Source of the DNA: Asterias rubens
Taxonomy: Eukaryota
Direction: 5' to 3'
Assembly (NCBI RefSeq): GCF_902459465.1
Contig: NC_047072.1
Span: 16,554,001 to 16,618,000 of the forward strand
DNA: 64,000 bases
Below, piece after piece: positions 3 through 56,700 of the stretch (the first letter of the stretch is position 1; each line of letters begins with the position of its first letter). Both the position numbers and the translations under genes were made by a program. The notes below the pieces were generated by a model. It did not search any database. It was not told where the DNA came from and worked only from the letters and a program-made list of their open reading frames with translations.

Positions 3-686
3 TTTTGTCTAAAATATACTTGGAACCAGCTTACTCCATACACAATGAAATTTATTGACTACGGGTTGTTCTTTATGAAACGGCTCCAAATACCCTTTTG
101 CAGATTTTCCACTGAAGGAGGGGAGCACAGCATTTATTTACATAACTGCTTTTATTACCAGCACACCACTAGGCATGGTGGAAAAGGTAAGTATGATCCA
201 ACAATTGCTGTGTTCTCATCCTTGTGGAAGCGCCTTGCTTATGAAATTAATAATAATACAGATAGCGACAATGTTTCAGTGTTTTTCAATTCATATGTTG
301 AAAGACACGTGGCAGCAAGAAAAATACAAATGGCATATCGCCATTATGCTGTCAAAGCAAAGTTAAAGAGAACGGGCTGGGTAGAAAATCCAATGACGAC
401 CCAACAAGTTGAGTCAAACATGACCAGCTTGTCATATTTACAGGCAGAAATGTCTAGCTCTGTTACAGTCCAGGATGGTGATAAATCATTGGCTAGGTAT
501 TCCTTCATTGTGACAGGCAGTGTGCCAAAATTTGGGACATATTGTGTGTACGTGTATAAGGGACTGATGTACAAAACAATGCAAGCATTTCGATACAGAA
601 TATCATGGGAAACGTCTCCCCAGAATTCCCCTAAAACTTATAGAATTCTTATTCCCTCACAGGTTACAAATAATCTTAAACATTAG
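3..686 (+). CDS. 3' part (probably terminal exon) of an unidentified protein with an IQ-like motif
   Basis: The frame is open from base 3 (FCLKYTWNQLTPYT precedes the listed Met at 45) to the TAG ending at 686, 228 codons in AT-rich DNA. It contains HVAARKIQMAYRHY. An AATAAA follows near 829. No family recognised. Confidence 0.6.
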   Translation, partial: FCLKYTWNQLTPYTMKFIDYGLFFMKRLQIPFCRFSTEGGEHSIYLHNCFYYQHTTRHGGKGKYDPTIAVFSSLWKRLAYEINNNTDSDNVSVFFNSYVERHVAARKIQMAYRHYAVKAKLKRTGWVENPMTTQQVESNMTSLSYLQAEMSSSVTVQDGDKSLARYSFIVTGSVPKFGTYCVYVYKGLMYKTMQAFRYRISWETSPQNSPKTYRILIPSQVTNNLKH

Positions 687-4600: not shown

Positions 4601-7600
4601 CTGGAAATACTGCTTAACAACTCATGCTTAGTGCATTGAGCGGGTCACTAGTCCCATGTGAAATTGATTTGAGGTGGTATCCTATATTCTGGTAATCAGG
4701 ATTTGAGGTGGTATATATATTCTGGTAATCAGGATTTGAGGTCAGCTAGTTATTCTGTGGGCTTGGACTTTAGAAAGATTGCTCCTTGTACATGCTTCCT
4801 GTATGGCCCTTGCTTAGATGTGCCTCTTATGGGTTCCTCCTACATAACATTACTTTAATGTTTCTATATTTTGTGAACATCGTGGAAAATGAATTGAATT
4901 GAACCTAACTAAACATAACACTTTATGCAGTTTCGAATTGAAAACTGTTTAGCAAACATATTGTGTGCTCTTACAGAAACAATGTTGGTTTAGTGTTACG
5001 ATAAAGGGACAAATCATATTAATTTATGAATATAATAATTATGTTTTAAAAGTAACATAAATTATTTTCAACTTTTCCTTTAAGCAAACTTTACACTGAC
5101 CATCGTTCACGCCGAAGAATACACGGCCCTGGGAAATATGCCGGCAGAGAGCGCCATCAACGGCCCATATGGACTAGTTACTACTCACTTCGCTACATCA
5201 CCAAAGATCTCCACATACTTAGTATGTTTTGCTGTGTTGGATTTCCCTTTCATAGAGATGACGTCAAAAAATAACATTACAGTAAGAGAGAGATATTTGT
5301 TTCTGCATTACAGTAAGAATGGAAGATTTTATATTTCATTTGAAACAATTTTCGTCTTTCATAGCCATTTAAAAAAAAACATTTTTTTTGGGGGGCCTCT
5401 TGTCAACAAAATACTTTCACGGAAGATAATATTATTTTGTTAAATATCGAAACTCTGTTCCAACAAGATACAAAGTTGTATTACTATAATACATAAGGTC
5501 GACTTTGTACAACACCCTTAAGAAAGGCTGAAATGATAAAGTTCGCGTTTTCGAGATTTTATTATGTTTTTCCTTGTATATATTACTTACCTTTTCTTGT
5601 AAGTTTAATTTCAAAAGTTCAACTATGTACGAACAAAAATATGATTTAGCATGTCAATCAAGTCATGTGATGAACAGAGTTGCAATTGTTGCTATAGTGG
5701 GGTTTAGCTTTAAAAATTGTATTTGCCATTTTTGATAAAAAGTGTGCGCAGACAGACAAGACAAAAATCCGAAAATCTCTGTGACAGAAATTAAAAAATT
5801 CCTTGTTTTCTGATAATTTATTCTTCTTCTGATAGCTCCGAGGTTGGGCAAGGCCAGATGCGATGGATGCCCTAGAGTTTGGATTAAACATGACAGCAGA
5901 GACTTTAGATTTCTACATTCAGCACATTGGAGTTGGGTTTCCACTGCCGAAGATAGGTCAATATTTACTTGTAAATATCTTGTGATTTGTATCCATACTT
6001 AGCTATCCTTCTAATAACCTTATGTGGTTCAGATTTATAGGCGTTTTTTATGTGGTGTTTTCTAGCGAAAAAGTCCATGATAAAAACACGAAATTTACCG
6101 ATAATGATTTCTTTCATAGTATTTGCATAATTATAAGCCTAGTATAAATCGTCTGTTACTATTCTCTGGTAATGAAACAAGGATGCGTATTATCACTGTA
6201 AAATTTGAGGACAGCAGCCGGGTGTGACGTCATCACAAGAGGTCCACGCCCGGAAAAACTACCCACCCCCAGGAATATCTGACTCGCGAAAGCTCTATTT
6301 TGTGTTTGTTGGTTTTTCAGTAAAAACTGCTGCCGAACGTTTGCTATACGTTTCAACATGTCTGGTTCAACTAATTAAGTCAAATTGTGTTTTATGGAGA
6401 CTTAAAGACAGTGGACACTATTGGTAATTGTCAAAGACTAGTCTTCACAAATGGTTTATCTCAACATATGCATAAAATAACAAACCTGTGAAAATTTTAG
6501 CTCAATCGGTCGTCGAATTTGCGAGATAATAATGAAAGAAAAAACACCCTTGTCACATGAAGTTGTGTGCTTTCTGATGCTTGATTTCAAGACCTCAAAT
6601 TCTAAACCTGAGGTCTCGAAATCAAATTCGTGGAAAATTACTTCTTTCTCGAAAACTACGTCACTTAAGAGGGAGCTGTTTCTCACAATGTTTTATACCA
6701 TCAACCTCTCCCCATTACTTGTAATCAAGAAAGGTTTTATGATGATAATCATTTTGAGTAATTACCAAAAGTGTCCACTGCCTTTAAAACATTGAGATTT
6801 CAGGCATTTAGGATACCATAACTTCTCTTGTTTCAGATGTTGTAGCGGTTCCAAACTTTGAGGCAAATGCAATGGAGAACTGGGGTTTAATCACGTACAG
6901 AGAAACCGCTTTACTTAATAAGGAAGACACTACATCAGAAAGTAGACGCGAGGGTCAAGGCTTCACAATTGCGCATGAGATGGGACACCAGGTTAGTCAG
7001 TTATGAATATTCATCTATTATGTAAATTGATTGACTATCAGTATCAGTTACCATTATCAAGGATTCACCATTCCGCATGAGATGGGACACCAGGTTAGTC
7101 AGTTATGAATATTCATCTATTATGCAAATCGATTGACTAGCAGTATCAGTTCACCATATGGGACACTAGTTTAGTCAGTTATGAATATTCATTTATTATG
7201 CAAATCAATATCACTGTCAAGGTTTCAACTTTGCGCATAAGATAGGACACCAGGTTAATCAGCTATGAATATTCAGGTTTAATATGCAAATAAATTTACT
7301 GCCAGTCTTTATTATTAGTTATTAATAGCATTTGAGAAAGCCTTTTCTGAGGTCGTCAAACCGTGGTGCCATTTAACGAGTTTGGTATAATTCAACTCAT
7401 GCAATCTTTAAAAGTAAAGCATAAAGGGTAGCTTGTAGCGTTGAGAATAAAAACACAAAGACATTGAAGTCGATTATTCAACATAAATTGGAAACAATTA
7501 GAATATAATTGGTTTGCAAATCAATGGTAGAAGCTGTTGAGATGCAAATGGAACCTACAATTGAATAATGAAATTCTTTTTGCTTGAATATCAACCCCTA

Positions 7601-10600
7601 TTCAAAATCTTCTGAATGTATTTTTAATTCATGAGGAATTTGTAGTTATAATAAACTTCCCTCTTACTAAAATGAAACGGACGTTGTAATTGTTAAAGGG
7701 GAGCAATCTTTGAGCTATTACTTCCAATAAACTTTTGCCTTTCTTGTTTTCTCTCGTTTTCTTCGATCTTTCTTCTTCTTTGCGTTTCGTACTCTCTTTC
7801 GATGTATACTCCGAGCAGCAAACTTTTCACTCCAATCCATCTCTTTAGTTGCCCGCATGGTGGCGCTCTTTGAGAATTCCGTGATCAGTTTAGCGCTAGT
7901 TCTTCGTCTTTTCAGATCGTCAGCGTACTGCATTTCTTCGTAGACCTGGAATCTTTTTTTCTTCTTTTGCCCGATTATTTCCAATCGTCGAACTTCTGCA
8001 AGCTGTGCATCAAAATAAAACATGGTTATTTTGTTTTCATTGTAATGTCAATCATGAGCATTGTTCCCTTTGCCCTCGGTTTGATTCCTTCAAATACAAA
8101 GAGTTAGGATAGTCCTTACTCAGTAGTGCTAAGAGATGTTGATAACTTAAGGCTAGTCCTTAGTTAGGACGAGGCGCTTGGAAATAAGACTAGTCTTAAC
8201 TCCTTGTGAAATCCACCCACGTATATGTAACTCATTCCACCTCCCCACTTCGCTCTGTCGTTCATGTAATTCGATCTAGTACCAACGATTTGATATTATG
8301 ATTGTTGCGCGTACGATAAACAAGCTTTTTATGCAGACTGGGTTGTTTAAAGGCAGTGGACACTATTGGTAATTACTCAAAAAAATTCTTAGCATAAAAC
8401 CTTACTTGGTAACGAGTAATGGGGAGAGGTTGATAGTATAAAGCATTTTGAGAAACAGCTCCCTCTGAAGTGGAGTAGTTTTCGAGAAAGAAGTAATTTT
8501 CCACAAATTTGATTTCGAGACCTCTGATTTAGAATTTGAAGTCTCGAAATCAAGCATCTGAAAGCACACAACTTTGTGTGACGAAGGTGTTTTTTCTTTC
8601 ATTATTATCTCGCAACTTCGATGACCGATTGAGCTCAAATTTTCACAGGTTTGTTATTTTATGCATATGTTGAGATACACCAAGTGAGAAGACTGATCTT
8701 TGACAATTACCAATAGTGTCCACTGCCTTTAAAGGAAAGTAAATGATACAATTTTCATCAAATTAAACTTAGTTCATCAAGTTGGACTTTTTGATGACTT
8801 GTGATATGCTCCTCAATCAATACTTACATCTTTCCGTTCCTTTGCTCTCAACATCTTATCATCAGTCTCAGCTCTACCCATAGTACACATGCTACTCAGT
8901 GTGGGAATCGGGGGACAAATCTCACGATTCTGGCTTGGGAAAATATATGAAACTCCCCCAATAGTAATCCTAGGTTCAAAAAGGATCCCTGAAAATTGAC
9001 ATCAAAGAAGAAATGTTTAAAGGATACATTTTGATAATTGGTCATCATATCATGATACAACGACTCAAGGCACTAGAATAAAACTTACACAAGTTGGTAG
9101 TAAATTTTGAATTAAAAAAGGCTGGTGCCTTGTTTGATTTAAAGAGTATTATGTATGTAAAGAAGGTGTGATCAGGACCCAAATTCTTAGAGCTGCTTAG
9201 CAACTGATTTTGTGCCTAATTTCCATTTCACAATGCTGCTGACCATAAGCACGCGAAAAGGCATGCTAACCTTCCGGTGCTTACCGCACGAAAAAAATGA
9301 CGTCACAATGCGAAGCCATGGTAAACGCGCAATATGGCTACCTAATAGTTTGTTTGCTTACCATTCCTGTGATAATACGCTTACACCTTAGCAAATCATA
9401 CACAAATAAAGACATAAATGGATTACCTGCTTCGTGTAGCTCGCCAAGTATTTCTGCTGTATCTCGCTTATTCTTTCTGAACACGTCACGTGATGATTTT
9501 AAAGGTGGCAACTCACGTGACTTTATCTTCTCCAACGTCACAGATTCAGCTGATCGTGTTTGTGACGGTGGACTATCCAAGCATTTGATTACAATTCTAT
9601 CTGTGAAACACATACAAATATGAAATATTTCTTAGTCTACAATTCCAAACCAATCAGGGTAGAAATGTAATTATTAGAAGTAAAATGTTTAGGCACTGGA
9701 CACCTTTGGTAATTGTCAAAGACAAGTATTATCCACTCGGTATATTCCAACATTTGTATTTAATTAATAACATGTGGAAGTTTCGGCTGAATTGGTCGTC
9801 CAAGTTGCAATAGAATAATTTAAATAATAAAGGGCTTCAGGTCTGTTATTATTTTTGAGTGAGAAATGACCTCTTTATCAAAAACTACGTTACTTCAGAG
9901 GGAGTCGTTGCTCACAATGTTTTATACTATCAACAGCTACCCATTGCTCGTTACCAAGTAAGTTTTTATGCTAACAATATTTTTGAGTATTACCAAAATA
10001 GTGTCCAATTTGTCTTTAAATTTTTGTAAAATTCCTTTGATTGTGTTGAGAAATTTTGACAATTTTACCACCAAAACCTTAACACTACAATGTTTTTGTT
10101 CCTGTGGAAATAATTGATTATAAATTTAGAGTTGGGGCAATTTTATACCTGTAGATGATGTTGATGTCTTGCCACCAGTGACACTCATGCTTCTGGTACT
10201 CTCATCTACACGTTCATTATCACTGGTATTACAAGTCTCCTCTCCAGTCTGATCTTTGTCTTGATAATTGTTGTTGTTATTGACTAACGTCTTTGCAATG
10301 GAATGCTGTTCTTTAGCTCTATGTTTCTTGGGTTGAGTCGTTGCGTCATTTAGAGCAGACTGGTCGATTGTTACAGATACATCATTCTTCGAGATTTCAA
10401 TTTTCTCTGACGACACGTGATTGGTTGGAATAGCTGAAAGAGGTTCGAGCACGTGAGTGATTGCGTCATTGAACTGCGATGTTGTGACGTCATCAAATAT
10501 CTTGCTGCCGCAAGCTGGTGCCGCCTTCAAAACAAAACACACAAGTTCTATGTCATTCATTTGTAATATGTGAACTAAATTTATCTATATAAAAAACCAG

Positions 10601-13600
10601 TCTAGCTTCTTATCCAAACTATTTTATTACCAGACACAAATACAATGGGTTGTTTTTAAATACAAAAAGTGTTCCGTAAGTTAGTTTCCCATTACCGTCA
10701 AATCAAATGTGTCATGGTGTTATTTCGTGTCATTCTTGCAAAGCGAAACAATAAAAAAAAAATTAAAACAAGGAACAGTAAACTGAGAGAAAACAACCAT
10801 TTTGATGTAAAAAAGTTAAAGTTTAAATCCAAGGAAATATTAACAGTTGAAATCGCTATTAGATTATGATATAACGCAGGAGTGTGGAACTGTGGACTAT
10901 TGGTAATCTATACCGTTTAATGATCTTGATGTTGCAACTATTTTTAATATTTGGCTACTACATACCTGAATCTTCTGGTTCTGTTTGCTGGTTATTCTTC
11001 CCAAACGTCCTGCACGAGTTGTGTTCGGATTTACCTTCATGTTGTTTTTGTTTTTATTCAATGAAACCGGCCATTGAGGTGACCACGTCCATTGGCTTCG
11101 TGAATGTTAGTGTGATGAAACGTTGTCTGTTTGCTGCTCAACCCACAACATGATCCACATCGCCATGGTGTAAAGCGCATACGCACAATTTTCGCGCGTT
11201 AACATTTCTCTTTATGACGCGACGAAGGAGTTGTGGTAGCGCTGCGCGCAACAGTATTCTACGCGTGCGTACACTGACTAACACGTCACAATCAAAATCC
11301 GTGATGAAACGCACTGTTCAAGGGTTCACCATAGATATAGAATTGGATTCACGTCGTCGCCGCGCGAACCATACGCACGCCCTTTATTTGTCCACCATGC
11401 GTGCAGTTAGAATTTGATGAGAAGGAATTTGCTTTTGTTTTAAGTAGGCCCACTTGTAACTAGTTTATTTAAACCGCAAACACAAAGGTAATAAATAAAA
11501 TTGAATCTTCAGCAGTCAGATAACACAACTGTTTTGCCTGCACCAATGTAGAACATCTCACTACATTTTTTGTTACTTGTCATCCCAAAATTTCATTCTT
11601 AGTCTGAAATTGAATTTTATACGTTGAATATGTTTTTGTGGCGGCCATTTTTCAAAACGGCCGTCATTGCGGTCATGTGACCTTTTCTAGGTGGCTTCCA
11701 ATTTTAAAACAACTGCTAAGTCATGGTTTTAAAACTCTGTCCACTTTTCATACTTGTCCGTCACAATTATTGTGTTCTGCAAATGAACATAATAATCATT
11801 ACTAACATTACAACATGATCGCATTATCATCTTTGATTAACCATTGATACATGTTTCTCTCGTTGTAGTATTTTGGTAACTTGGTCACTCAGGAATGGTG
11901 GGAGTATATGATCTTAAAGGAAGGAGGAGCATCTTATCTTGGGCTGACGAGTCTTCAAGTTGTTCAACCTACTTGGGAATACGTAAGACATTCATTGACT
12001 AACATATCATAGTCTCAGTTTATGGTAATGTTTCATCTACAGGCAAGCGATATCACACAGAATGCTTTAAATTAATTCCGAATTTATGTGCTAATAAAGT
12101 TTAGCTTTACTCTCATATCACCAAAGAAAACAGTTTTATAATATGACAGTTTGGCAGGTGTTTAGTTCTTTAATAAAAGTGTGCTCGAGGTGTTTAACTT
12201 TTTTTTAATGAAAGTTACTGCACTATAAAGAACACAAAGTGACGTGATTCATCAGATGGCAGAGTTAACTCTGATTATATGATTATATCTTTGTCAGGAC
12301 GATTTATTTGTGATAAATGAAGTGACTCCGGCTATGGCAAGTGATGCACAAATTAATGCTAGACCAATACAGAAAGAAGTCTCGACTCCGGCTGAGATAG
12401 CCGGTGGGTTTGGATCCAGCTCTTACGATAAGGTATGTACATTTATGATTTAAAAAAGGGCCTAGTCACACGAGACAATTTGCAGGCAACCAGGGCCATG
12501 GCAGCCGCTATGAGACAGGGCATCCACACCTGAATATTCAAGCTATTGGGGTGTTATCTAATACTGCAGAGGTTCCATATAACTTGTAAGATCCTTAGTC
12601 GGTTTTCTCTATTAGTAACCAACATACATTATTTTCTTGTAATTTGTTGCCAGTCACCAGCAGTACTGCGCATGTGTGAACACGTCATAGGAAAGCCGAC
12701 ATTCAAAAAAGGACTCACGGTAAGCCGTTCTCTTCACGTCACAGTCATTTTAACATCACGTGTTTAATTTTACAACTATTTCATCTCAAGTTTCTTATTG
12801 ACATCGTGGGCTTCTTAGGGCAGGGTCTCATATTGGTCAAAAAATAAAGAAGTTTTAATAAGAACAATTAAAATACAAAGGAAGGACAGAGAAACAGCAG
12901 GAACCCGAAATATTGCATAAAAGAAACAAAGTTCCCGTCTAAAGGCTCTCCTTTCCAGTTGCTCTTCAAAGATAAATGACTTTATTAGGTTGTACTATAA
13001 CTTTATGTTGTATTGCCTTAAAACACAGAAATACATGACAAGATACGCCTTTGGAACTGCAACAAACGATGATTTCTGGGAGTGCCTGCAAGAGGTAGGT
13101 CTACAAATAATGCTTCATATTATACATCATCCAAACATGAATATTCATGATCTGATTTGTTCACTCTTATAGGCAGGAAACAAAGATTGGTTGCTAGACA
13201 TCAATGTGAATGACTTCATGCATTCAAGGGTACTACGTCATCATTCCAATATGAATATTCAATATCTCGTTGTTTTATTCTCACTTATAGGCAGTTAACG
13301 AAGATGGGTTGTTAGATATCAATGTTAATAACCTTATGCATTCATGGGTACTTCAATCAGGATTCCCAGTTGTAAATCTAACGAGAAACTACGAGACTAC
13401 AGATGAGATCTCATTCACTGCCGAACAAAGCCGATTTTTACTGAACCAGGATGAGACAGACGATGCAAAGTAAGTTTATAAACAGCGCCACCCAGAGGCC
13501 AATACATGGCAGTGTTGTATAGCTCTTGGTTATGTTCAGTATTGCCCAATGACCATACACATCTCGTCAACCGTGTCATTGCAGAACACGATCACTCAGC

Positions 13601-41746: not shown

Positions 41747-44700
41747 ATGAAGTCAAGTTTCTTTAATCGTTTGAGACAATCTCCTAAAACCTTATATATC
41801 TCAACTTCACTGAGACGTCTTCAAGTGTTTCTGCTTATTTGTGTCTTAACTTGCCTGCTCGGTCCAGTCAAAGGTACTGAACTTACAACTCAAACATCAG
41901 ATATTCATCAAATTCTCCAAGGCGTAACGAATACACCACCGGGTCTGGAAGATGCTTCGGAGTCTAGCTTCTCAAGAAAAGGAGAATTTTATCTTGGAGG
42001 ACTTTTTGATATTCACTTGGAGCAGGATGGAGTTTGCAAAGCGATAAATCCAAGGGGTTTGCAGTGGATGTATGCAATGGTGTATGCGATCGAACTTATT
42101 AATGCACGGCAGGATTTGCTTCCCAATATAACACTAGGTAAGTATACAAACAGTAAGAACTACTTCTGTATTATTGTGGACTTTTTGTGTGTGATTTCAG
42201 GCCTGTGTATGCTTCGTTTTTTGAAAGGACAAGGGCACCAAGGCAATTTATCCTTGGTAAAGTAAAGGGAACACTGTAAGGAAATTGCAATATATGTGTA
42301 CCCTTTCTGAAAATTGTAAATATCGGAGAGTACCTTTAAATCATAGGTACAGTAACGGAGACAATCTGGTATTGTTCTGCCCGTTGTTTTTAATGAAGCA
42401 CTATTGTGCGCCCTTTCTGAAAGTTATACATATCTGTGAGTACCTGTATTCATCGTACACTACCAGAGACAATGGGGCATTGTGTTGCTATTGACTCTCA
42501 TACAGGTAGAGTATAGATTATGAACCATTGATTTCCCCCACCCCCTCCTACGCGATTCGCTCCGTTGCTTCTGAGATTGTTCAAGTGTCAATAACATAGA
42601 AGGGATCTTTTTATTTGTTCGATTGGGTTTTACGAAAGGACATGTTGAATAAGGCATGAGGTTGCTGTTTGGTTATTATATTAAATAAGAGAATCTACAC
42701 ACGTAGGCCGCGGAGGAAGGGGCCTATACCTCTGCCAAAGTATAGCCCTATACAACGTGTATGACATGGGTTTGGAACAGTGCATGTACAAAATGCATGT
42801 ACAATTTTGTAAACTACTATGTGATTTTGCTTTTGTTACCTTTCTATGCACTATGCTTCTCTATGAAATTGGGCCCAGGTCATAGAGCCAATCGCCTTCG
42901 TTGCCTACGTGAAGTATCAGGCCGGTATTGTTTGACTCCGAACATGAAGTCAACTGAAAACCCCGCAATTTAAATGGAAATTTGAGTGAATCGAATATTC
43001 TACTTTTAAAACATCTTCCCAGCCATTGTTTGTCTCCTAACAAAGTGCCGGATCCGAACAATTCTTTTACGAAATGTATACAAAAACCCTAGGCCTACAC
43101 AAACCCTAACCCCAACCCTAACCCCAACCCCCACACCAGCTCAAGCGTGTAGATCATAAAAAAGGTCATCTTTAAGCTTAGGCATGCAGGTACATACTAG
43201 TCACCAATATTACAACAGATGTTTGAGCTCAAACACAAACAAGTATTTGCTGTTTAGTCTCGGAAAGTCACCAGTCTCCACCAAAACTTGAATAGAAACG
43301 AACCAAACGATATGCAGCCAGTCACGTATGCTTGTTTTTTAAAGGGCAAGGGCACCAATTTTTTTTCCATGGTAAAGGGTACGAGGAAGTTGTTAATTTC
43401 TACCGGAATGTTTCAAGGGCACCAAGGCAATGACCAGGGGGCATGGAGGCAATCACCTTCGTTGCCTCCTTGAAGTATCCAGGCATGTATATGTTCAAAA
43501 TACAAATCAATATTTCAGTAAAAGTTCTCTCAACTCGCTTTCTGAAAAAGTCACCGTGTCAAATAAAACAAGCTAAAATTCAGCATAAAGAGCAACATAG
43601 CGGATACACATGTATATTAATCATCATTCGCTGTAAAACATAATTTATGATATAGTGAAACCTATAATAAAAGCTATGCATGGTGTTGACTTGCAATTAG
43701 GGAACTAGTTTGTGGTTACACCTTGTCATCAATCTCTCTTGAGCTTAGCTATGTCGGTTTATTTGTAAACACAATTAGATCAAGAACAATCCATAGTCAT
43801 TTTCTTTAAAAGATAATATTCTTAAAACAAACATTGCATTCTGTGTGTTTTGAGTTCTCTAGTTCCTCTGAAAAATTAGGGCGGGAGGCCGAAGAAAAGT
43901 AAGATGGGAAAGAAAATTTAATAACATGGAAGTGGGTTAAATGTTTCAAGTCATACCTCACATGGAAACTGTGTAAAAATATCACTTTATTTGATAATGT
44001 TTAAGAGCGAAATGTTAAATATAACGTCACCGAAGAGCAAAAAACAAACTGGTTTGTAAATCACCCAAGAAGGAAATTCTGCGGCAGGCATCAAGCTCAA
44101 ATTAAATTTTGTTTTGATTTAATATCACCAGAATTCAGGATTGAAGTATTACATTTTCGATTCGTTTTTAGGATATCACAAAAGAGTAAACCCAAATGGT
44201 TTCAAATACAGTGGCATACTGCGCCATTTACACTTGAGATACACATTTCTAGTTTCCCTCCCCTTTTTACAAACACTAATCGGAAAATGAATGAATCTCT
44301 AAAATGAGTTTGACCTTTACTTTATCGGGTATTTTTGCCAAGATTATAGCTATTACCCCAAAGTCAACTCTTACTATAATGCAAGCAGCTCATTATTACA
44401 AAAGCCAGTGTAATTATTACAGTCAATAATTCATGAAAGTACCTATCAAACAATGGACTGGCAGAGTCAAGGTCATTATGAAATACTTATGCCTTCTTAA
44501 TTATTAATCCAGTAACGGTTGTGGGGGATGTTTATGTTTCTTTTGAATAGTCTTCCTGTGCATATTCGCCAAGCTAATACTTTACAATGTTTTAAGTTCC
44601 TGTTGAAAACTCATTTGTTTAAAGCTTCTTTTTTGTAATTTGCCTATTTATATCTTGTATCTTTCTCTAATTGTTTATTTTATTGTTTCTTTTATGCGCT

Positions 44701-44749
44701 TAGAGGCTTTTGCATTAGGCGCTTTACAAATGTCTTATTATTATTATTA

Positions 44750-44787
<38 letters not shown>

Positions 44788-47700
44788 TGCACATATCTTG
44801 AATAGGGAATGAGCATCATTGTTTGTTGTTTGCTTGGTTGTTTGTTTGTGGGGGGTTGCATGGATGTATGATTCGTTTTTGCTTGACAATGCAAGTGCAC
44901 CAAGGCATTTTCTCCTAGGTTAAGGGCACCCTATGAGGAAAGTGTACAATTTATGCGAGACGTGTGAACTGGAAGTAAAATGAACACATGTGACCTTAGT
45001 GTTATAGTTGTCGAGACGCACACGTGTAGCAACTCTGTTAACACTTTTTGATCGCAAGATCCAATTTCTTCTCACTTCAGTCCAGTTCTTGACCAAATGC
45101 CCTCTTTGTTTCTATGAAAGGGTGAGAGATTCACCACCAACCCTCAGAAGTAATTTCACAAAATTGTAGGTGTTGCTTTTTTTTATAGACGCGCTTTGGA
45201 TTGAATACTACTAGAGCCGATTACACATTACATCCATCTCAAGATGACCCTTCAGTGTTACTGTAGTGGTTTTAATTCTGAAATCACCATGGATCAATCT
45301 TAGTTGTTGTGAAATCGAGCTCATAGCTCATCCTTAAAGGCACTGGGCACCTTTGATAATTGTCAAAGACCAGTATTCTCACTTCGTGTATCCCAACATA
45401 TGCAACATACATTAATAACAAATCTGTGCAAATTTGGACTCAATTGGTCATTGCGATTGGTCATCGCAGTTGCACAAAATACGTGTTTGCTTTCAGAAGC
45501 CATTAAAAGGCTTCAGGCCTAAAGTATTTTTATTTGTGTGAGAAATTACTCCAGAGGGAGCCGTTTCTCACAATGTTTTTTACTATCAAAAACTCTCCGT
45601 TGCTTGTTACCAAGAAAGTGTATATGCTATTACACAATATTGTATTGATTCAGACCTAATACTTCACGAAGGCAACGGATGTGATTGCCCCCATGCCCCC
45701 TGGTCATTGCCCTGGTGATCGGCCCCAGTAGAAATTCCAAATTCCTCTTAGGGTGCCCTTTACCAAGGAGGAAATGTCTTGGTGCCCTTGCCCTTTCAAA
45801 CAACGAAGCATACATGCCTGTTGATTGATTAACCAATGGTGTCCAGTGCCTTTAAAAAAAAAGATAAATTTCCAAATCGGTCTGCAATAAATATTCACCG
45901 GCTCAGCCGACTTTTAAATATATGAGACTGTGCACCTCTGACAAATGGATTTACGAAAAAGCGATTCGTTCACACTACATGTAGTCAATATCAATAGTTT
46001 GTCATTATGATTGATTTGTCGCCAAAGGCTGACTAACAATTGAAAGCACTCGTGATAACTCAACGATCCCACAAATAAACAAGGTGTTCAATTCAGTAAC
46101 ACGTGCATTCACACCCGGCCCAGATCCATACAATATAACCCGATGAAAAATCAATCATAGTGTCCGATATCATGTAGCTTGCAAGACTGAATACTAAATG
46201 TCGTGGGGTAAAGAGTTAAGACTTGTCTTATCAAGGGTTGGAACGAGTTACCCGTCCTAACTTAGGACAACTTCTAAAGAGTCTCATGTCCTAACTTGGG
46301 ACTACCCTGCAGCCATTTTCACCAAACGCTATAGGATTAATCCTATCTCGAGTTAGGATGAGTAAATTATCCTAACTTAGAGGGTGTTTTCAATGCATTC
46401 AACGTGTTCGGTAACAGAACGTAAGTCGTCTTAAGTCCTAAGATTAATCTTAAGTTAGGAAGTTATATGACTAGTCCTAACAAAGGACTACCCTTAGCTC
46501 ATTAAGAGTTAAACAATTCTCCTGAAGACGAGCAGAGTATTCTAATTGAAACGTCGAGACCAAACTGGCTCTTTTCAGAGCCAACACTCCCGCAAGTTTA
46601 CTATTATTATTAGTTTATTCGTATTCTTCCTAATACCTTGCAAAGCTTCAAACATCACTTCACAAAGTTTGCTTATTGCAAATCTTGGGCTTTACACTTT
46701 ATGGTAACTTTCCAACTTGAGTACCGGAACAAATAAAATCAAATTTCAGAAAGACTCTTTCGATTTGGAATGCACGTAATAATTAAATTAAATTTCCAAC
46801 TTAAAAATTACCGACAGTTCCGTGAGAATACTAATTACTTTGTAATTTCTTTTGGCAGGATCTTGGCGAACAACTATCTTTTAAGTTGATGTTTTGCTTA
46901 GCAATTACACGACAACGAATGAATAATATTGTGTCCACGGTAAACATTCAAACAATTCTGAGCTGATTTAATCAAAGTTATTGGCCGTCGACGCCCGGAA
47001 AAATTATATTGAATTCTAAAAACCCGGATGTTTGTGTTGAAGACATCAGATTTGTAGTTTAATAAAAGCCATATTAATTTTGTCAAGCATCCTTTTTTTT
47101 TTTTTATATATATTTGTAAAGACTACGAGCTTCGATGTTAATTTGTAAAATTCTATCCATATCAATTGTATACAGGCCTCGATGAAGCTATGATTTGCTT
47201 TGTTTAAAGGCAGTGGACACTATTGGGTTACTCAAAATAATTATTGGCATAAAACCTTACTTGGTAACGAGTAATGGGGACAGGTTGATAGTATAAAACA
47301 TAGTGGGAAACGGCTCCCTCTGAAGTGACATTGTTTTGGAGGAAGAAGTAATTTTCCACGAATTTGATTTCGAGACCTCAAGTTTAGAACTTGAGGAAAT
47401 CGAAATCAAGCATCTGAAAGCACACAACTTCGTGTGACAAGGGTGTTTTTTTCTTTCATTATTATCTCGCAACTCCGACGACCGATCGCTGAAATTTTCA
47501 CAGGTTTGTTATTTTATGCATATGTTGAAATACACCAAGTGAGAAGTATGGTCTTTGACAATTACCAATAGTGTCCACTGTCTTTAAGTGTCTATAGTCG
47601 GGAACCTGTTTGACATCATGTAGCCTAAAGTGTTGAGCTTCAGTATTATTTTAATATTTTCGCTTACAATATACGGTGTCAGGACACTTCGTACCTTGGA

Positions 47701-50700
47701 CACTTCGTTTCTTCTTACAAGACACTTCATACCTTCTTACATTTTAAAACCTTTACTGGACAACACAAACGAAAACAAGTATCTGACCGCGGAGGAAGGA
47801 CCTTGTGGATGGGGGAATGGTTGACATTTTATGTGAGAAAGTCTTAAAAACTAAGACAAAATATTCAGCTTGTTTATGATGCTTAAAAAAAAAAAAAAAA
47901 AAAATCAACATGTTGTGTTTGTGGTCACATGGTTATTCGTTTGACTTGCTTCCACACACGACTACCAATGATGTCACTCTTCTCTTTATATACAAGTTTA
48001 TGCAAATCATACAGATTTACAAACAAAAGGAAAACAAGACGTAAAAAGAACTTTCCAAAGAAACTTGAGCAGGTATTTTGCCACTTTTTTCCCTATGTAT
48101 TCCACCAATAGCAACAGTTTTACAAACTACTTTGTTGAACAATTTGTGTATACAAATTGTGTCGTCACAGGGCCAGCTTAGATTAAAAACAAGGGGAAAA
48201 GATAACACTGATTTTACAAACTACTTTCTCAAACAAGTTGTGTATTAACAATCTGTGATGTCACGAGACCAGCTGACGTAGTTCATTGAACCAAGCTGCA
48301 CTGGACTTTCGGCATTATGTTGAAGCGCTTGCACTTTTAATTTAATAAAAACCCTTCTACCCACATTCGAATTTACGTTCTTTACAAATATTTACCAAGT
48401 CCGAAGATTAAGCAAACACAAAACGAGTACAAAAAGAGAGAGTTGTAAACCACCGCAAAACTTCAACTAGCGTTTATATTAAAAAAATTACAAAGTAAAA
48501 AAACAAGGGAAAGGAAAAAGAGCTGTCGCCAGAATCTAATAAACAATAATCACATCACGTAATCAACACTGGCCTGAGATTGAAAACAATGAACATAGGA
48601 CCTAATCAACACTCTGCCGATGATCTAAGATTGAACAGCAACCATCGTCTGCGCGTCCAGCATTATTATCTTTCCTTATTTTATTAAGCTATAATTACAG
48701 CAAGTGATGACGGTCTATGACGTTGAAGACATTCAAGATAATATTTAATAATTATGTTTTAATATTATTTGGAGTCAGGATGTGTAAGTTCAATGACTGT
48801 GCTTTCCATATTCTTTAGAAATTTGTTTTGTTCATTTAATAATCGTCATCGGAACAGGAGCCACGACAAAATCACACACACAATGGAACCTTTATAAGAG
48901 CGGTATTGACTCAAATATATTCAGCTCTTGAAATTTTCAAGAGAGGACAGTTCAATTAATTTGTGATATAAGTGAGCTTCCTCTACCCGTCATATGGCAG
49001 CGTCCCATTACACAATACAACAATGAATACAATTTGAATAGAAGTTTCGATCGGCGATTTCTTTGGTATCAGTTCTGTGTTTTGTAAGAGTGCATTACTA
49101 AGTTACAGAAAACATCTAAAGGCGACGTATTAAGTTTCTTTGTTTGTGAGAGCAATGTTGGACAGTGAAGCAAACCAAAGTAAAGTTTACTGTACTGCAT
49201 TGACTTTACAAAAAGATAAGAAAACCACACAATATTATAAACCAACAAAAGTTTAAAAGAAACAACAATTTAGTTGAAGTATAAGTGTGAAGCGACAGCG
49301 ACGGTAACAGCGNNNNNNNNNNNNNNNNNNNNNNNNNNNNNNNNNNNNNNNNNNNNNNNNNNNNNNNNNNNNNNNNNNNNNNNNNNNNNNNNNNNNNNNN
49401 NNNNNNNNNNNNNNNNNNNNNNNNNNNNNNNNNNNNNNNNNNNNNNNNNNNNNNNNNNNNNNNNNNNNNNNNNNNNNNNNNNNNNNNNNNNNNNNNNNNN
49501 NNNNNNNNNNNNNNNNNNNNNNNNNNNNNNNNNNNNNNNNNNNNNNNNNNNNNNNNNNNNNNNNNNATGTAAATCTAAAGAACGTTCTTTAAGCAGTTTA
49601 GAAAATTTCCCAAAATGACAACAGAAAACAATTGTGATTATTCACATAATTATGTACAAATGACATTGTAAGATGATTCATAAATACCCCAGGCAGTTCC
49701 GCCATTCGGCCTTCAGCTCGGGCCTTTATCGCACGACCACGGCCATTTAACAAACTAGTCGCTACCCTTTTATTATCTTATTAATTAGCGAAGCCAAACG
49801 TAAACCAACAAGTAACTTTATGCAAACACGATTTACAAAATCAATATAGTCCCTCATGTTGAACAAATATTAATTAGAAAAATAATGTTCATGTTCAAAC
49901 ATACATAACGTGATCGTTGAGCATACTTAAATGTACTGGACGCTATCGGTATAAACTCAAAATAATTGTTAGCATAAACACTTACTTGGTACTGTGGGAA
50001 ACAGCTCCCTCTGAAGTAACGTAGTTTTTGAGAAAGAGATGATTTCTCAGTCAAATAATAAAATAATCCAGGCCTGAAGCATTTTCATACTATTATAATT
50101 AAAGCACACACATTAATGTGCATAAAGGATGTTTTTCTTTTGTTATCGTCATGCAACTTCGATGACCAATATTGAGCCCAAATGTTCACATGTTTGTTTT
50201 TATGTGCATGTGTTAAGATACACCAAGTGAGACGACTGGTCTTTAACAATTACCATTAGGTGTCGGAAGTGTCTTTAACACGTTGCATCTATATCAACAT
50301 CTTCAATAGCAATTAAGATATTTACAACGAGTTAATGAGATATCGATTTGGATATAGGTGCTTTTAATATTTGTTTTAATCATCAAGACATACATTTATG
50401 CAAAAGAACAGCTTCACTGATGTTTGCACTGTACTTCACTGATGTTTGCACTGTACTTCACTGATAGCAGATAAATTATGCACAGCACAATTAAAGGCAG
50501 TGGACACTATTGGTAATTGTCAAAGACCAGTCTTCTCACTTGGTGTATCCCAACAAACTAACAAATCTGTGAAAATTTGGACTCAATTGGTTATTGAAGT
50601 TGCAAGAGAATAATGAAGAAGAAAAAAACATCACCCAGCTGCATTACTTTGTGTGCTTTCAGATGCATAATAAAAGGCTTTTTTTATTTGAGCATTTGAG

Positions 50701-53700
50701 TGAGAAATTACTTCTTTCTCAAAAACTACGTTACATCAGAGGGAGCCGTTTCTGACAATGTTTTAAACAATCAACACCTCTCCACTACTCGTTACCAAGT
50801 AAGTTTTATGCTTACCGACCTGCAATAAAGTAAAAATATCCTTTTTTCCTTCAAGTTTAACATTATTTTGGAAACCCTCTTATGCGTGTACATAAACAAT
50901 CAATAAACAAAAAGAGCAAAGTTAAAATAAGCAAAGGAGGGAGATACTTAAAGATTGCAATCCGAAGGGATTGTTATTGGAAACTGTTTTGGATCTTAAA
51001 ATGTTTTGCTTTTAAAAATCCGGGACATTTACTTCCAAGGTTTTTTGGTTAGATGTACGGGCTAGATTATGATCAAAGCATGCAACCCTTCAATGTTTGA
51101 TCAGCTTATAGGTCATGCAGCCAACTCTGCAATTACTATCTATAAATAAACAGTAAGCGGGCTATTTTACGTTTTTGTTTAAATCAGAGACGGATAAGTT
51201 TCATTTCTGTTCTTGACACACTTAAGTGACGAACCATTTCTTGAATTAGTTGTAAATACTTCTTATCTTTTATCAATGTAACAATTCAAGTTGGGTTGTC
51301 ATAGCTTTTAAACAATTAGGACAACGAAGCTCCAGAAAATGTAAAACCCATAAGAGGTAAGCTGCAGTTTCCATTTAGAGACGTATAAGTTTCATTCCTG
51401 TTCGTAACAAACCTAAGTGACACACGACTGCTGGAAGTAATTTTAAATACCTTTGAACTTTTGTCATAGTAAAAGTTTAAGTAGAATTATCACAGCTTTA
51501 TAAGTTGATTTAGCACCTTAAAATGTAAAATAACGAACAGATATAGAGAAAAGCTGCAAATTTAATTGATTTCAACTGTCTTCCATTTATGATTTACACG
51601 CACCCACACGTGATAACATTATTACACTATTTCTTATCAGACTGGTGAGAAATATAAGAACGTATGGGTTACAACAAAACAACAATTATATGTGTGACTG
51701 TTTTAGTATGCATCATTTGTGAATTGTTTTGGGAATATTTTACCCATGGATATACTACATAAAAAACCTATAGATAAAACCTTAAACGGCACTAAAATCG
51801 TTTCTCAAAGCCAATGTCGGCATGTTATAAGGTTAATGCCATTGACACGACTGTAATAAACACTTAGGCCTATATTGCATTTGCAAGTAAAATCCTTTTT
51901 CTAGACTTCGTGGTCGACATACTAAACTTAAAGCACATTATTCATTTTGGATGTCAATATATAACTAAACATCTCACACTACTGTCAGGAAGTGTTGTAT
52001 AATAACACAGTTAAACCGAACCAGGAATGCTGTTAATGGATTGGAGTATATTAGACCGAATGTTCAATGATTTATTCGTGACTAACTCAAACGAGTCGTG
52101 CACAGTTGCTCTTCTCACTATTCATTATCCAAGTTATTCAAACTCCTGGTACGACCGATGTTTAATGGCACGCTATATGAATTATGATATAATAATCAAT
52201 TTTTGCCACTGTTTATGTTGAGCGGTCAGGGCCCCACAAAGTGCAGTTAAAGCGATTTGAGCGAGATAAACTTTGTCCACTGTACGGACAAAACTATTCA
52301 GACAATTTTGGCTTGTTGTCAACAAACTTGAAATTGTTTAAACTAATGTACATATATTTTTCTGTCAACTCGAATAGGGTCTGTTTATATACGTTTGGTA
52401 AGGACTTTGTAATGTAATGGTTATAAAACACTTACTTGGTAATCAGTACAACAGCATTTTTAGAATCAAACGTTTTACCTTGAAGTAATGCGGTTATGGA
52501 CAAATATACAACTTGTATCTAAATTTTTGAATTTGAATTCGAGAAGAGTTACCGACGTTTAAAGGTTAGTTTTATGGTATCTACTAATATATAGGATTGA
52601 CAAAAATAGTGTTTTACAATTACCACACAAATCCAATCCCTTTAAATAATGTTTTCAAGAAAGCATTTTTTTTTTACATTCCGGTTTTGACTCACAGCTT
52701 TCTGTTGAGAATTACTGCGTCTTGTGCCAAATATTAAAATAATGTTTTAGAGCATTACTTTAAGGCTAAGTGGCGGTTGGATATTGACCAAGAATGTAAA
52801 GTGTTTGTTTTGGTCATCACAAAAGGAAACTTGTCACAGAAAAGAAAATTGAGCTTGTCGAAGAAATAACTGCTTCTTGTGCCAAAATGAAAATGTTTCG
52901 GTCATTACAAAAGAAATCTAGAACAGAAAATGAAATTGAGCAGGGAAATAACTGCTTCATGTGCCAAAATCAAATAGTGTTTTTAGAGCATAACTTATCA
53001 GGCTAAGGGACAGTTGTATAATGACAAAATTGGTCAAGTGTTTGTTTCGTTCTTTAAAAGAAAACTATAGGAACAGAAAAGAAGACTAAGCAGGAGAAGG
53101 ACTGCTTCTTGCGCCAAGATGAGAACGTATTGTTAGTGCGTTGTAAGGGCCAGTTGGTTAATGACAAAAAGGGTCAAGTGTTTGTTACGGTCATTACAAG
53201 AAGACTAACTTGTAACAGAAAAGGAAATTTCCTTGACGTCGGGCACTTCAACGTCAAGATCACTTAGTAATTACTATCGCTTTATTTCCCCAGGGGTCAA
53301 GGGGTGTACGTCCTAACGGATTTACGCTAACTGCACCAGACTTATTAGCCGTCATCACAATTGCATTAGGAACGGTAAAAGCAGAAATGGTTACCAGACG
53401 GTGGTGGGGACAATATTTAAAAAAAATGTACTTATAAGTCTCCAAAATGATACAAGATGCTGAAAGGAAAACAAGACAGTCTTAAGACACTGTCGACCAG
53501 CTACAGACTAAAGAACACAAATAGGCCTACAATACAATTCAAGATTATTGTATCACATATTACATAGCTACACTCTGGTTCTAAACCACACACGATGTTA
53601 GACTGGTTATACAAGTCCTTTAGTCCGCAACTCATGTCATGTAAAGCATTAGATGCCAATATTACGCTATCGTACAATCACTCGTACGATCACTAGACAG

Positions 53701-56700
53701 AAAAGACTCGCCACTTCAACGCATCAACATTCCACCAGTATTTAGTTTAGCTGATATTTCAAGTTCAAATTAATATCACATAAACACAACCCCGCTGTCA
53801 TGATGTTTATATGAAGTCCAAACACTTCATAGTTAAAGAACCAGACGACTCTTGGTCAAAATACTTTTTGTTCCCTTCCATCAAAACACGTGTTTACGTT
53901 CATTTATTTGAAGTGCGAGCGCGGAGAGTAAAAACCCGACGGCTCTTGAATGGTGCATATTTCGGCTGCTCGGCAAAGAAAAATGTTAATAAAGTACGAT
54001 CACATTGAAGTGATTTATAAGTCTCAAAGACTGACAGGGGATTGAATTAAAGTGACCTATCAGTTGATAGTACAGATGCAAGGTTTGGGTTACTCACATT
54101 TTGTTTTCTTTCATGGAGGTTGCCAAATAGAGAACTGCGACGCAAGGGTAGTACACCACCTTAATAAGAAAGATAAATACGAAAAATAATTAAATTCTGG
54201 CTTGAAGATGATGGATTGAATATTAACATTTCCGTTGAAAATCATGAAGAGTGCAGACAAAATGACTTGTCTTCTATAAGAGACAAAACCTAGCTGAAAA
54301 GGAACATTCGAAAAGCAAAAACCTGGTCTTCCAATTATTTTAAAGGCACTGAAAAAACGTTTGATAATTGTCAAAGACCAGTATTCTCACAGTAGACTCA
54401 CTTGGTGAATCCCAACATAGGCTATGTATAAAATAACAAACCTTTGAAAATGTTTGCTCAATTGGCCATCGAATTTGCAAAAACACCCTTGTTACCCAAA
54501 ATTATGGTGCTTTTAAATGCCTATAATAAGAGGCTTCAGGCCTGAAGTCTTTTAATATTTGAGTGAGAAATAACTTCTTTCTAAAAAACTACGTTACTTC
54601 AGAGGGAGCTGTTTCGCGCTATGTTTTTTTACTTTCAACAGCTCTCCATTGCTCGTTATAATTTTGAGTAATTGACAATAGTGTCCAGTGCCCTTCAATC
54701 TGTACTTTATTTCGAGAAACTACAACCTGTTGGATTCATCCTGAAATTTGTGATGAAGTAATGGAACTGCAACAATTAATTAGTTAAACATGACCGACTG
54801 GTTGTCAACACGGATAACACGGGTAAGGGGACACCATTTCAACCGATTGGTTTTGCAATACGGAATTACAATGGTAAGAAAACCCCGGTCGAAACCTGGA
54901 AAGCTGAGCCTTTCTACAACTTTCAAACTCTCGAATAATGAGAGTTTTATTCATGAGTCTTGCTAACGATCATTAACCTTGACTAACCTATTAAACACAC
55001 TTGAGTTATCGTCAGTTCGTGACTATCAAATGGCCATAGGTAATGACAGAGTTAGCATTATGGAAATTATACAAGCATCATTTACGATCAGTAAAAACTG
55101 AAATATTATGGAAATATTATGGAGACGAAGATATGGGACCATTATTCGTCTCCCTTAATTTGCATATCAGTTTGGATAACTAGGGCTTGTTTTGGTGCAA
55201 TGCAATATAACATTATCAACATTTCTTGGGGGAAAATAAACCTCAACAATGCCCCCCCCCGAATATACCATAGCCTACTTGGGGAAGTTGCTGAGCACTG
55301 ACACATAATTTTGATTCCCGGCCAAAACGTAATAAAGTTTCCTTTTTTTTGCAACTGGTGCCTATTATGTCACGTACAACGTATTAACCGATATTGGTAT
55401 TATACCAGTACTGGTGTAGTAATACGTTTGTACATGACAAAGTAATGTTCGTCTAGACAAAAATTATTTTGGTGACACTATTTTACTCATTTCTCAAAAA
55501 GTACAGCACCTCTCAGCAGGTGCTTTAAGGGAAGCTTAAACTGCCAGTTAATTTACATAAAGATACTATAATTTAATCACATTTTTCTTCGTTCTCTGAT
55601 GCAGGATTCCACATTAAAGACACGTGTGGTAACCCCAACGTAGCTGTGACGTCATCACTTGATTTTATCACTAGTTCAGCCAACCTTGGAACTTGTAAAA
55701 ACGAGTGAGTAAAATTAACAGAAACTTGTTGATCTTTTTTTTCCCCAATTTGTTTTCAAGAATGTTTTTAACAAGTTTTTCAAAGTGGACTTTTACTGAA
55801 TTTATTTTGGTCACAAGTCCCAACTTGGACTTTTTTAAAGGTCACTTGAATGTCAAAATGGGATAGAAGAATTCCCTGCATTAATTTCCAATTGTAATCC
55901 AGATATATAAGAGCTCATTGAGTCAGTACGAGCCTTCAAACTGTAGTCATAAGTATTACTTATTCGGCAAACATTAGACAGTAAAACAAAACAGTGTATG
56001 ACATAAGTCAAAATGACCAAGGATATACATTAAAGCCAGCAACACATGCCTGAAAAAAAAGTTAAACTTATAACAGCGGCCATCATGGGCCTTCGTAGTC
56101 TCCGTTCACATCATACATGAAGTGTAGTCGGGATCCCAAACGCTAAAAGGCAGTGCGTTTTTATTTGTAGCCTAATATGAACTATCCATGCACCACAATC
56201 TAGATTATGTCCACATAATAAACCTGCACATGGTGTGTCTGAAAGCTTTTGTTTGAATGACTAATAAAGACCACACAGTAGGCCAAGGTTTCTTTAATTG
56301 TTGCTTACAATGCTTTGCAATCTGAATATACCATTGGCAATCCCAGCTGAAATGCACAATGGTTAAAGGAACAGTACAGAATTGATAAGAAAAAATACCG
56401 TCTGAGATCACAGATTAACATGAAACTTTCACTCTGTGATTTTAATGATAGTAGAAAACATCCATGGAAATTATTATGGTTTCTGAAAAACAAAACTAAT
56501 TTCCCGTTTGGAGTTTATCGCTCAGTGAGCGTGTTATTCCATTTTTTCAATCGAATTCATGCAAAAATTTCATCTGTTTTTCACTATTCTCTCGTGACCC
56601 AGATGGCCAATCGATCTCAAACTTCTACAGGTTTGTCAGTTTATGTATATGGTCGATTACATAAAGTGCTTACACTGCCAGCAACTGTTTTAAAGGATTT

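What the first reader, a model, noticed from the sequence alone, without database searches (positions are those of the whole stretch)
7718..11040. Hidden five-exon antisense gene nested in the intron that splits the aminopeptidase zinc-binding motif
Seen: three unlinked minus-strand ORF fragments from the track, plus two exons not in the track, join through canonical sites with matching phases into one 376-aa frame ([11 protein letters not shown]...[11 protein letters not shown]). It fills almost all of intron 6, the largest aminopeptidase intron, which lies between HEMGHQ and the third zinc ligand. An AATAAA lies on the minus strand at 7313-7308. Inference: a real nested gene whose transcription runs head-on into the host gene, so the two may be mutually exclusive by tissue.
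Basis: partly seen in the sequence, partly recalled or inferred. Interest (0 to 1): 0.75.

Follow-up and report, generated by a model that had tools for sequence, protein, structure and literature searches.

The report
Real antisense gene nested in aminopeptidase intron
A genuine, spliced, protein-coding gene of unknown function lies backwards inside an intron of a sea-star aminopeptidase gene; this layout is common, and NCBI already annotates the same gene, nested the same way, in the sister species Asterias amurensis.

Summary
Its five minus-strand exons do join into a 376-aa frame. One spliced RNA contig from a sister-species library (word depth about 1037, against about 12 on host exon 6 and 0 on host exon 7) uses all four predicted donors and three of the four acceptors. 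Exon 2 starts at 10524, not 10584, so the protein is 356 aa. That 356-aa model is 92.7% identical, with no indel, to XP_071801034.1, "uncharacterized protein [Asterias amurensis]". NCBI places that gene inside a 957-aa Peptidase_M1 gene on the opposite strand, so the nesting is conserved and already annotated there.

The coding frame is clearly kept: 0 indels in 1071 nt, against 29 in about 2.7 kb of introns and 3'UTR. The amino-acid sequence is only weakly constrained: dN/dS is 0.71, against about 0.19 for host exon pieces.

No homologue, Pfam family or fold match was found. The protein is basic and mostly disordered, with a confident C-terminal helix of about 110 residues.

"Mutually exclusive with the host" rests on a single library. 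This is an ordinary nested gene that codes for a fast-evolving orphan protein. This scan has already noted several antisense nested genes elsewhere in this genome.

The parts
11074..11400 (-). Promoter-like CpG-rich stretch just upstream of the nested gene's 5' end
   Evidence: GC is 0.46-0.49 and CpG observed/expected 1.2-1.7, against 0.76 for the whole window. 11040-11300 is better conserved with A. amurensis than the introns are. Promoter function is inferred; the transcription start was not mapped.
10966..11073 (-). Exon 1: 5'UTR of at least 33 nt, then ATG at 11040 and 25 codons
   Evidence: The RNA contig has 106-108 letters beyond the joint 10523/4 -> 10965/6. Donor is GT at 10965-10964. 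It starts MKVNPN, as XP_071801034.1 does.
10525..10584 (-).
   Evidence: The RNA contig skips it. It has a 5-nt deletion in A. amurensis, which would shift the frame.
10149..10524 (-). Exon 2 (376 nt), coding for the disordered Ser/Thr/Asn-rich part
   Evidence: RNA contig piece 10149-10523 and joints on both sides. Orthologous exon is L002 10531-10906, 95.2% identical, no gap.
9427..9600 (-). Exon 3 (174 nt)
   Evidence: RNA contig piece 9426-9600, joints 9600|10149 and 8987|9426 (cut +1). L002 11453-11626, 97.1% identical.
8828..8988 (-). Exon 4 (161 nt)
   Evidence: RNA contig piece 8828-8987, joint 8002|8828. It is the only 161-nt open AG..GT segment that fits the phase. L002 12063-12223.
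7247..8002 (-). Exon 5: 94 codons plus TAA (7720-7718), then a 3'UTR of about 470 nt
   Evidence: RNA contig piece 7247-8002. The coding part is L002 12920-13204.
7278..7313 (-). Poly(A) signals: AATAAA 7313-7308 and ATTAAA 7283-7278
   Evidence: Both are conserved in A. amurensis. The RNA contig ends at 7247, 61 nt past the AATAAA and 31 nt past the ATTAAA. The true cleavage site was not mapped.
6837..6991 (+). Host M1 aminopeptidase exon ending in HEMGHQ
   Evidence: Acceptor is AG at 6835-6836 and donor GT at 6992-6993. Pfam PF01433, E = 9.9e-14, profile positions 28-78.
11869..11982 (+). Next host exon, with the third zinc ligand ([18 protein letters not shown]...)
   Evidence: Acceptor is AG at 11867-11868 and donor GT at 11983-11984. 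Pfam PF01433, E = 1.7e-7, profile positions 80-115. The HEXXH-X18-E spacing is intact.
6955..7311 (+). Tandem copies of the host exon-6 end plus donor; the degenerate third copy underlies the nested gene's 3' end
   Evidence: 6955-7049, 7057-7151 (94%), 7217-7311 (65%).

Best explanation
This is an independent, RNA polymerase II-type, five-exon protein-coding gene on the minus strand. It lies wholly inside the 4877-nt intron that separates HEMGHQ from the third zinc ligand of an M1 (aminopeptidase N-like) gene on the plus strand. Shown: the exons are 11073(or further)-10966, 10524-10149, 9600-9427, 8988-8828 and 8002-7247, and the coding sequence runs 11040-7718 for 356 aa. The mRNA is spliced at GT..AG sites. 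It is abundant in one sister-species RNA library in which the host gene is barely or not detected. Gene and nesting are conserved between the window's species (a close relative of A. amurensis; other notes of this scan call it Asterias rubens) and A. amurensis. Inferred: the gene has its own CpG-rich promoter at about 11074-11400 and ends after ATTAAA/AATAAA inside a degenerate duplicate of the host's exon-6 junction. The product is a basic protein (pI 9.9) rich in Lys, Arg, Ser and Thr. Residues 1-245 are predicted disordered, and residues 244-355 form one long, confident, highly charged helix ending in a [14 protein letters not shown] cluster. It has no detectable relatives, so it is a taxon-restricted, fast-evolving orphan. 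My best guess at its biochemical role, at roughly 30%, is a scaffold that binds a polyanion (nucleic acid or chromatin, or microtubules) through the basic helix. Nothing here tests that guess. Convergent transcription may damp the host gene where the nested gene is on; this is possible but not shown.
For: Sequence model. One 1572-nt RNA contig at word depth 1037 carries joints 8002|8828, 8987|9426, 9600|10149 and 10523|10965, all CT..AC on the plus strand. Unique intron stretches sit at depth 0-41 in the same run. Two DNA-like runs are unspliced across the same junctions, so this is not a processed copy. XP_071801034.1 (356 aa) lies inside a 957-aa Peptidase_M1 gene on the opposite strand in GCA_032118995.1. 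The orthologous exons translate exactly to that protein, all with AG/GT borders. There are 0 gap events in the 1071-nt coding sequence against 29 in about 2723 nt of introns and 3'UTR; about 11 would be expected, P about 1e-5. P(open frame by chance) is about 1e-10, and there is a CpG peak at 11000-11400. The 5' region is conserved. AlphaFold2 gives pLDDT 80-97 for helix 244-355 and below 50 for most of 1-245. The ESM Atlas model has pTM 0.25.
Against: dN/dS is 0.71 (N-terminal half 0.91, C-terminal half 0.57) and does not differ significantly from 1 (Fisher p = 0.34), so selection on the amino-acid sequence is weak. There is no homologue, Pfam family or fold match and no evidence that a protein is made. 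The RNA evidence is one contig from one library labelled "RNA?", from the sister species and not the window's own. Other RNA runs of that species were not listed as holding exon 2. Transcription start and poly(A) site are not mapped. The functional guess has no direct support.
Confidence: 0.9

Rival explanations
1. It is a very young gene, possibly born de novo in the intron, and evolves almost neutrally. It is transcribed, spliced and perhaps translated, but it has little or no selected protein function.
For: dN/dS is 0.71 and not significantly below 1, against about 0.19 for host exon pieces. No homologue turned up in 1.84 billion representative proteins or in the 5.8-billion-cluster collection. 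The protein is mostly disordered.
Against: There are zero indels in 1071 nt where about 11 are expected. The ORF is intact, all splice sites are kept in two species, and the 5' region is conserved. mRNA is very abundant in one library. The C-terminal half is more constrained (0.57).
Confidence: 0.25
2. It is a spliced long non-coding antisense RNA whose long ORF is accidental. Any role would be regulation of the host aminopeptidase by transcriptional interference.
For: The orientation is antisense and intronic. The host is not detected where the RNA is abundant. Amino-acid constraint is weak.
Against: A 356-codon open frame covers 68% of a 1.57-kb RNA in AT-rich sequence, P about 1e-10. The frame is kept without any indel across about 5% neutral divergence.
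Confidence: 0.04
3. The reader's 376-aa form, with exon 2 starting at 10584, is a real alternative isoform.
For: The acceptor TATATAG at 10586-10585 is canonical, in phase, and conserved in A. amurensis.
Against: The only RNA contig uses 10524. NCBI's model is 356 aa. The 60-nt extension is 55 nt in A. amurensis, which would shift the frame.
Confidence: 0.05
4. It is a domesticated or decaying transposon gene, or a retrocopy, that landed in the intron.
For: The intron holds several SINE-like repeats.
Against: The exons are single-copy in depth in the DNA runs, while the repeats reach 1e5-1e7. There are four introns, so it is not a retrocopy. No Pfam or transposase domain was found. The repeats lie in the nested gene's introns, not its exons.
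Confidence: 0.02

Closest known systems
XP_071801034.1, uncharacterized protein [Asterias amurensis] (GCA_032118995.1, CP134965.1)
   Same: It has the same length (356 aa) and 92.7% identity with no indel. It has the same five exons and splice sites, and the same position and orientation inside the M1 aminopeptidase gene.
   Different: It comes from another species. There are 26 amino-acid differences, 13 of them in exon 2. No function is assigned to it either.
Opposite-strand nested (intronic) protein-coding genes of animals, for example 2mit in an intron of Drosophila timeless2 (PMC3786989); nested-gene transcriptional interference (PMC3192792)
   Same: A complete transcription unit with its own exons lies inside one intron of a larger gene on the other strand, so interference with the host is possible. 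The abstract of PMC3786989 states that intronic genes make up about 6% of D. melanogaster genes.
   Different: Here the nested gene is a lineage-restricted orphan with weak amino-acid constraint. No interference or phenotype has been measured.
Stathmin-like domain (Pfam PF00836)
   Same: The resemblance is loose and architectural only: a short predicted hairpin (216-223) is followed by a charged helix of about 110 residues. One weak feature-based Atlas neighbour cluster has 12% stathmin members.
   Different: Pfam gives no match even at E <= 10. There is no PDB sequence match, and no stathmin or RB3 chain among the Foldseek hits. It is not a member on present evidence.

Membership tests
Nested opposite-strand protein-coding gene | The whole transcription unit lies inside one intron of the host gene | tested here: met
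   The transcript spans 11073-7247, inside intron 6992-11868.
Nested opposite-strand protein-coding gene | It has its own spliced mRNA on the strand opposite to the host | tested here: met
   One RNA contig carries four joints, each CT..AC on the plus strand. These joints are absent from two DNA-like runs.
Nested opposite-strand protein-coding gene | It has a conserved open reading frame, so it is coding and not a lncRNA | tested here: met
   The 356-codon ORF is intact in two species, with 0 indels against about 11 expected. P(chance ORF) is about 1e-10. dN/dS of 0.71 is not significant on its own.
Nested opposite-strand protein-coding gene | It has its own promoter | tested here: inconclusive
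   A CpG-rich, conserved stretch lies at 11074-11400. No transcription-start data are available.
   In one library the nested gene has depth about 1037, host exon 7 has 0, and host exon 6 has about 12 as an unspliced contig. No second tissue was examined.
M1 zinc aminopeptidase (the host gene) | HEXXH-X18-E zinc motif and the Peptidase_M1_N, Peptidase_M1 and ERAP1_C domains | tested here: met
   HEMGHQ + [18 protein letters not shown] gives 18 residues between the second His and the Glu. Pfam hits PF17900, PF01433 and PF11838. The GXMEN motif reads NAMEN.
Stathmin family (PF00836) | Match to the family profile or to the stathmin-like domain fold | tested here: not met
   No Pfam hit at E <= 10 and no stathmin among the Foldseek PDB hits.
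De novo or taxon-restricted orphan gene | No homologue outside a narrow clade | tested here: met
   Only its own fragments and the A. amurensis orthologue were found. Sensitivity is limited by word seeding and length windows.
De novo or taxon-restricted orphan gene | The orthologous intron in outgroup species is non-coding | not testable with these tools
   No searchable sea-star outgroup genome was available here.

The most novel reading that the evidence does not exclude
The gene arose de novo, or diverged beyond recognition, inside this intron within the Asterias or forcipulatid lineage. It would then be a gene caught early in its life: frame kept, sequence almost free to drift. Its strong, stage-restricted transcription would run head-on against the host aminopeptidase and switch it off there.
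Probability: 0.15. Interest if true: 0.45.

Novelty: already known. Interest (0 to 1): 0.2.

Why it matters
The main value is for annotation. The gene may be missing from this genome's protein set, because no full-length copy of the window's own protein appeared in the clusters I could read. Biologically it adds one more antisense nested gene to a genome where this scan has already noted several. It also gives a clean example of a fast-evolving orphan protein whose frame, but hardly its sequence, is under selection. It becomes interesting only if outgroup genomes show de novo birth, or if expression data show real antagonism with the host peptidase.

Tried and rejected
- An exhaustive five-exon path search in Python timed out; a targeted search for exon 4 replaced it.
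- Pfam on each exon and on the full orthologue gave nothing. The only entry was DUF7385 at E = 0.2, below its cutoff.
- phmmer of exon 2 against 1.84 billion representatives found only a 58-aa unspliced ORF fragment of the same locus, from an ENA metagenome contig.
- The word-seeded homologue searches found only the query's own ORF. This covered exon 5, full-length P0003, and P0003 residues 175-356.
- Atlas feature and structure neighbours all scored below 0.8 (TM below 0.33), so they are leads only.
- Foldseek against PDB and Swiss-Prot models returned only generic long-helix or coiled-coil hits with E >= 0.05.
- phmmer against PDB sequences gave no hit at E <= 10.
- The stathmin-like idea was considered and rejected on these results.
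- A transposon or retrocopy origin was rejected because the exons are single-copy in depth and the gene has four introns.
- I could not search with the window's own spliced 356-aa protein because it has no reference, so the orthologue P0003 stood in for it.
- I could not check whether this genome's own annotation holds the gene.
Full report
**1. The observation**

On the minus strand, five segments are bordered by AG and GT and join in matching phases: 11040-10966, 10584-10149, 9600-9427, 8988-8828 and 8002-7718. Exon 4 is the only 161-nt open AG..GT segment that fits the phase. AATAAA is at 7313-7308 on the minus strand.

The host is an M1 aminopeptidase on the plus strand.
- Exon 6 (6837-6991) ends in HEMGHQ, followed by donor GT.
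- The next exon (11869-11982) reads [25 protein letters not shown]. This keeps the HEXXH-X18-E spacing.
- Pfam Peptidase_M1 profile positions 28-78 and 80-115 fall on the two flanking exons. Peptidase_M1_N and ERAP1_C hit other exons.

The intron is 4877 nt. Every other gap between the host exons I mapped is shorter; the largest, 15572 to about 20000, must still hold several exons. So "largest intron" holds by arithmetic. An open frame of 356 codons in this AT-rich intron has a chance probability of about 1e-10.

**2. RNA evidence**

Four runs were laid on 6800-12100. Run X1 (labelled "RNA?", organism A) holds one 1572-nt contig at word depth 1037. Its pieces are 7247-8002, 8828-8987, 9426-9600 and 10149-10523, plus about 106-108 letters beyond a joint to 10965/6.
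- All four joints read CT..AC on the plus strand, which is GT..AG on the minus strand.
- The first junction uses the acceptor AG at 10526-10525, so exon 2 starts at 10524.
- Unique intron stretches in X1 are at depth 0-41.
- Host exon 7 is at depth 0. Host exon 6 is at about 12, on a contig that reaches into the upstream intron, so it is unspliced.
- Runs X8 and X9 have even depth over exons and introns, with contigs that cross the splice sites unspliced. They are DNA-like and lack the joined form, so the X1 contig is not a processed DNA copy.

Only X1 among the listed RNA runs held exon 2. This hints at restricted expression, with the tool's caveat that "not listed is not absent". X1 dates from 2015. 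A poly(A) library of A. amurensis bipinnaria larvae was published that year (PMC4631335). I cannot tell whether X1 is that run, because run ids are coded.

**3. The orthologue and the nesting**

The exon-5 ORF sits in a 90% cluster that also holds XP_071801034.1, "uncharacterized protein [Asterias amurensis]", 356 aa. That protein differs from the window's RNA-supported model at 26 of 356 residues, with no indel. It carries the same substitutions as the X1 contig. So organism A is A. amurensis, and the window comes from a close relative with about 5% neutral divergence. Earlier notes of this scan call the genome Asterias rubens; I did not check that independently.

In GCA_032118995.1 the gene lies inside a 957-aa gene on the opposite strand that carries Peptidase_M1_N, Peptidase_M1 and ERAP1_C. 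The locus is colinear with the window. The orthologous exons, all with AG/GT borders, translate exactly to XP_071801034.1. Both the nesting and the gene model are therefore conserved and already public.

**4. Selection**

| Measure (Nei-Gojobori, window against A. amurensis) | Value |
|---|---|
| dN | 0.036 |
| dS | 0.051 |
| dN/dS, whole coding sequence | 0.71 |
| dN/dS, codons 1-150 | 0.91 |
| dN/dS, codons 151-356 | 0.57 |
| Fisher test against dN/dS = 1 | p = 0.34 |
| pN/pS, in-frame pieces of five host exons | about 0.19 |

The host figure is approximate because those exon boundaries were not refined.

The frame itself is plainly protected. The four introns and the 3'UTR show 3-7% mismatches and 29 gap events in about 2723 nt. 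The 1071-nt coding sequence shows none, where about 11 would be expected (P about 1e-5). That both corrects the model and serves as an internal control. The gene is coding, but the amino-acid sequence is only weakly constrained.

**5. Gene anatomy beyond the coding sequence**

Upstream of exon 1, 11000-11400 has GC 0.46-0.49 and CpG observed/expected 1.2-1.7, against 0.76 for the whole window. It is better conserved than the introns. I read this as the gene's own promoter; that is an inference.

The RNA contig runs 61 nt past the AATAAA, to 7247. A conserved ATTAAA at 7283-7278 lies 31 nt before the contig end and fits better, although a contig end is not a mapped poly(A) site.

The 3' end lies in the degenerate third copy (7217-7311) of a tandem array. 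The first copy of that array is the real host exon-6 end plus donor (6955-7049), and the second copy (7057-7151) keeps HEMGHQ|gt.

**6. The protein**

It is 356 aa and about 40.5 kDa, with pI 9.9. Lys, Ser, Arg and Thr together make up 38% of residues.

AlphaFold2 on the single sequence of the orthologue gives:
- pLDDT below 50 for most of residues 1-245;
- a helix at 184-207;
- a tiny hairpin at 216-223;
- one long helix at 244-355, with pLDDT 80-97, ending in [14 protein letters not shown].

The Atlas model of the orthologue has pTM 0.25.

No Pfam family matched. No relative turned up in 1.84 billion representative proteins (exon 2) or in the word-seeded searches. There was no PDB sequence match. 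Fold matches were only generic long helices with E >= 0.05.

A stathmin-like reading (hairpin plus long helix) was considered and fails the profile and fold tests.

My best guess is a scaffold that binds a polyanion (nucleic acid or chromatin, or microtubules) through the basic helix. I put that at about 30% and have not tested it.

**7. Comparison and verdict**

Opposite-strand nested genes are a well-known and common layout. Intronic genes make up about 6% of Drosophila genes according to the abstract of PMC3786989, and interference between nested and host genes is discussed in PMC3192792. This scan has already followed up several antisense nested genes in this same genome.

But the orthologue is already annotated, the layout is ordinary, and the product is an uncharacterised orphan. 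The idea of tissue exclusivity with the host rests on one library.

The most novel reading not excluded is de novo birth in the intron with functional antagonism to the host. Testing it needs outgroup genomes and multi-tissue stranded RNA-seq.

Noticed in passing
window 6955-7311: The host exon-6 3' end plus its donor (…[11 protein letters not shown]|gt) is tandemly repeated. The copies are 6955-7049 (the real one), 7057-7151 (94%, with an intact HEMGHQ|gt decoy donor), and a degenerate copy at 7217-7311 that carries the nested gene's poly(A) signals. The array is also present in A. amurensis.
   Followed up: partly
window 6402-6788 vs 8346-8732; 8374-8504 vs 9859-9989: SINE-like repeat copies (depth 1e5-1e7 in the DNA runs) lie in inverted orientation. 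One pair (387 nt, 91% complementary) brackets host exon 6. Another pair brackets nested exons 3-4. Such pairs could form double-stranded RNA in the pre-mRNAs, with possible editing, back-splicing or exon skipping; none of this was tested.
   Followed up: no
window 6860-6874: The host aminopeptidase's exopeptidase motif reads NAMEN instead of the usual GAMEN (…[11 protein letters not shown]…).
   Followed up: no
window 41747-60676 (+): A class-C GPCR-like gene (ligand-binding domain, cysteine-rich region, seven transmembrane helices). Its last exon is a 606-aa ORF at 58856-60676. Identification is by eye from the translations only.
   Followed up: no
window 45-686 (+): A 213-aa ATG ORF with an IQ-like stretch (AARKIQMAYRHYAVKAKLKR), upstream of the aminopeptidase gene. 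It has no Pfam match.
   Followed up: partly
L001 (ENA ERZ1764478, k141_911762): A 1590-nt metagenome contig is 99.3% identical to window 10280-8803 and unspliced, so DNA of this sea star is present in that metagenome assembly. Its first 112 nt do not match the window.
   Followed up: partly
window 49313-49566: A run of 254 N (assembly gap or mask).
   Followed up: no
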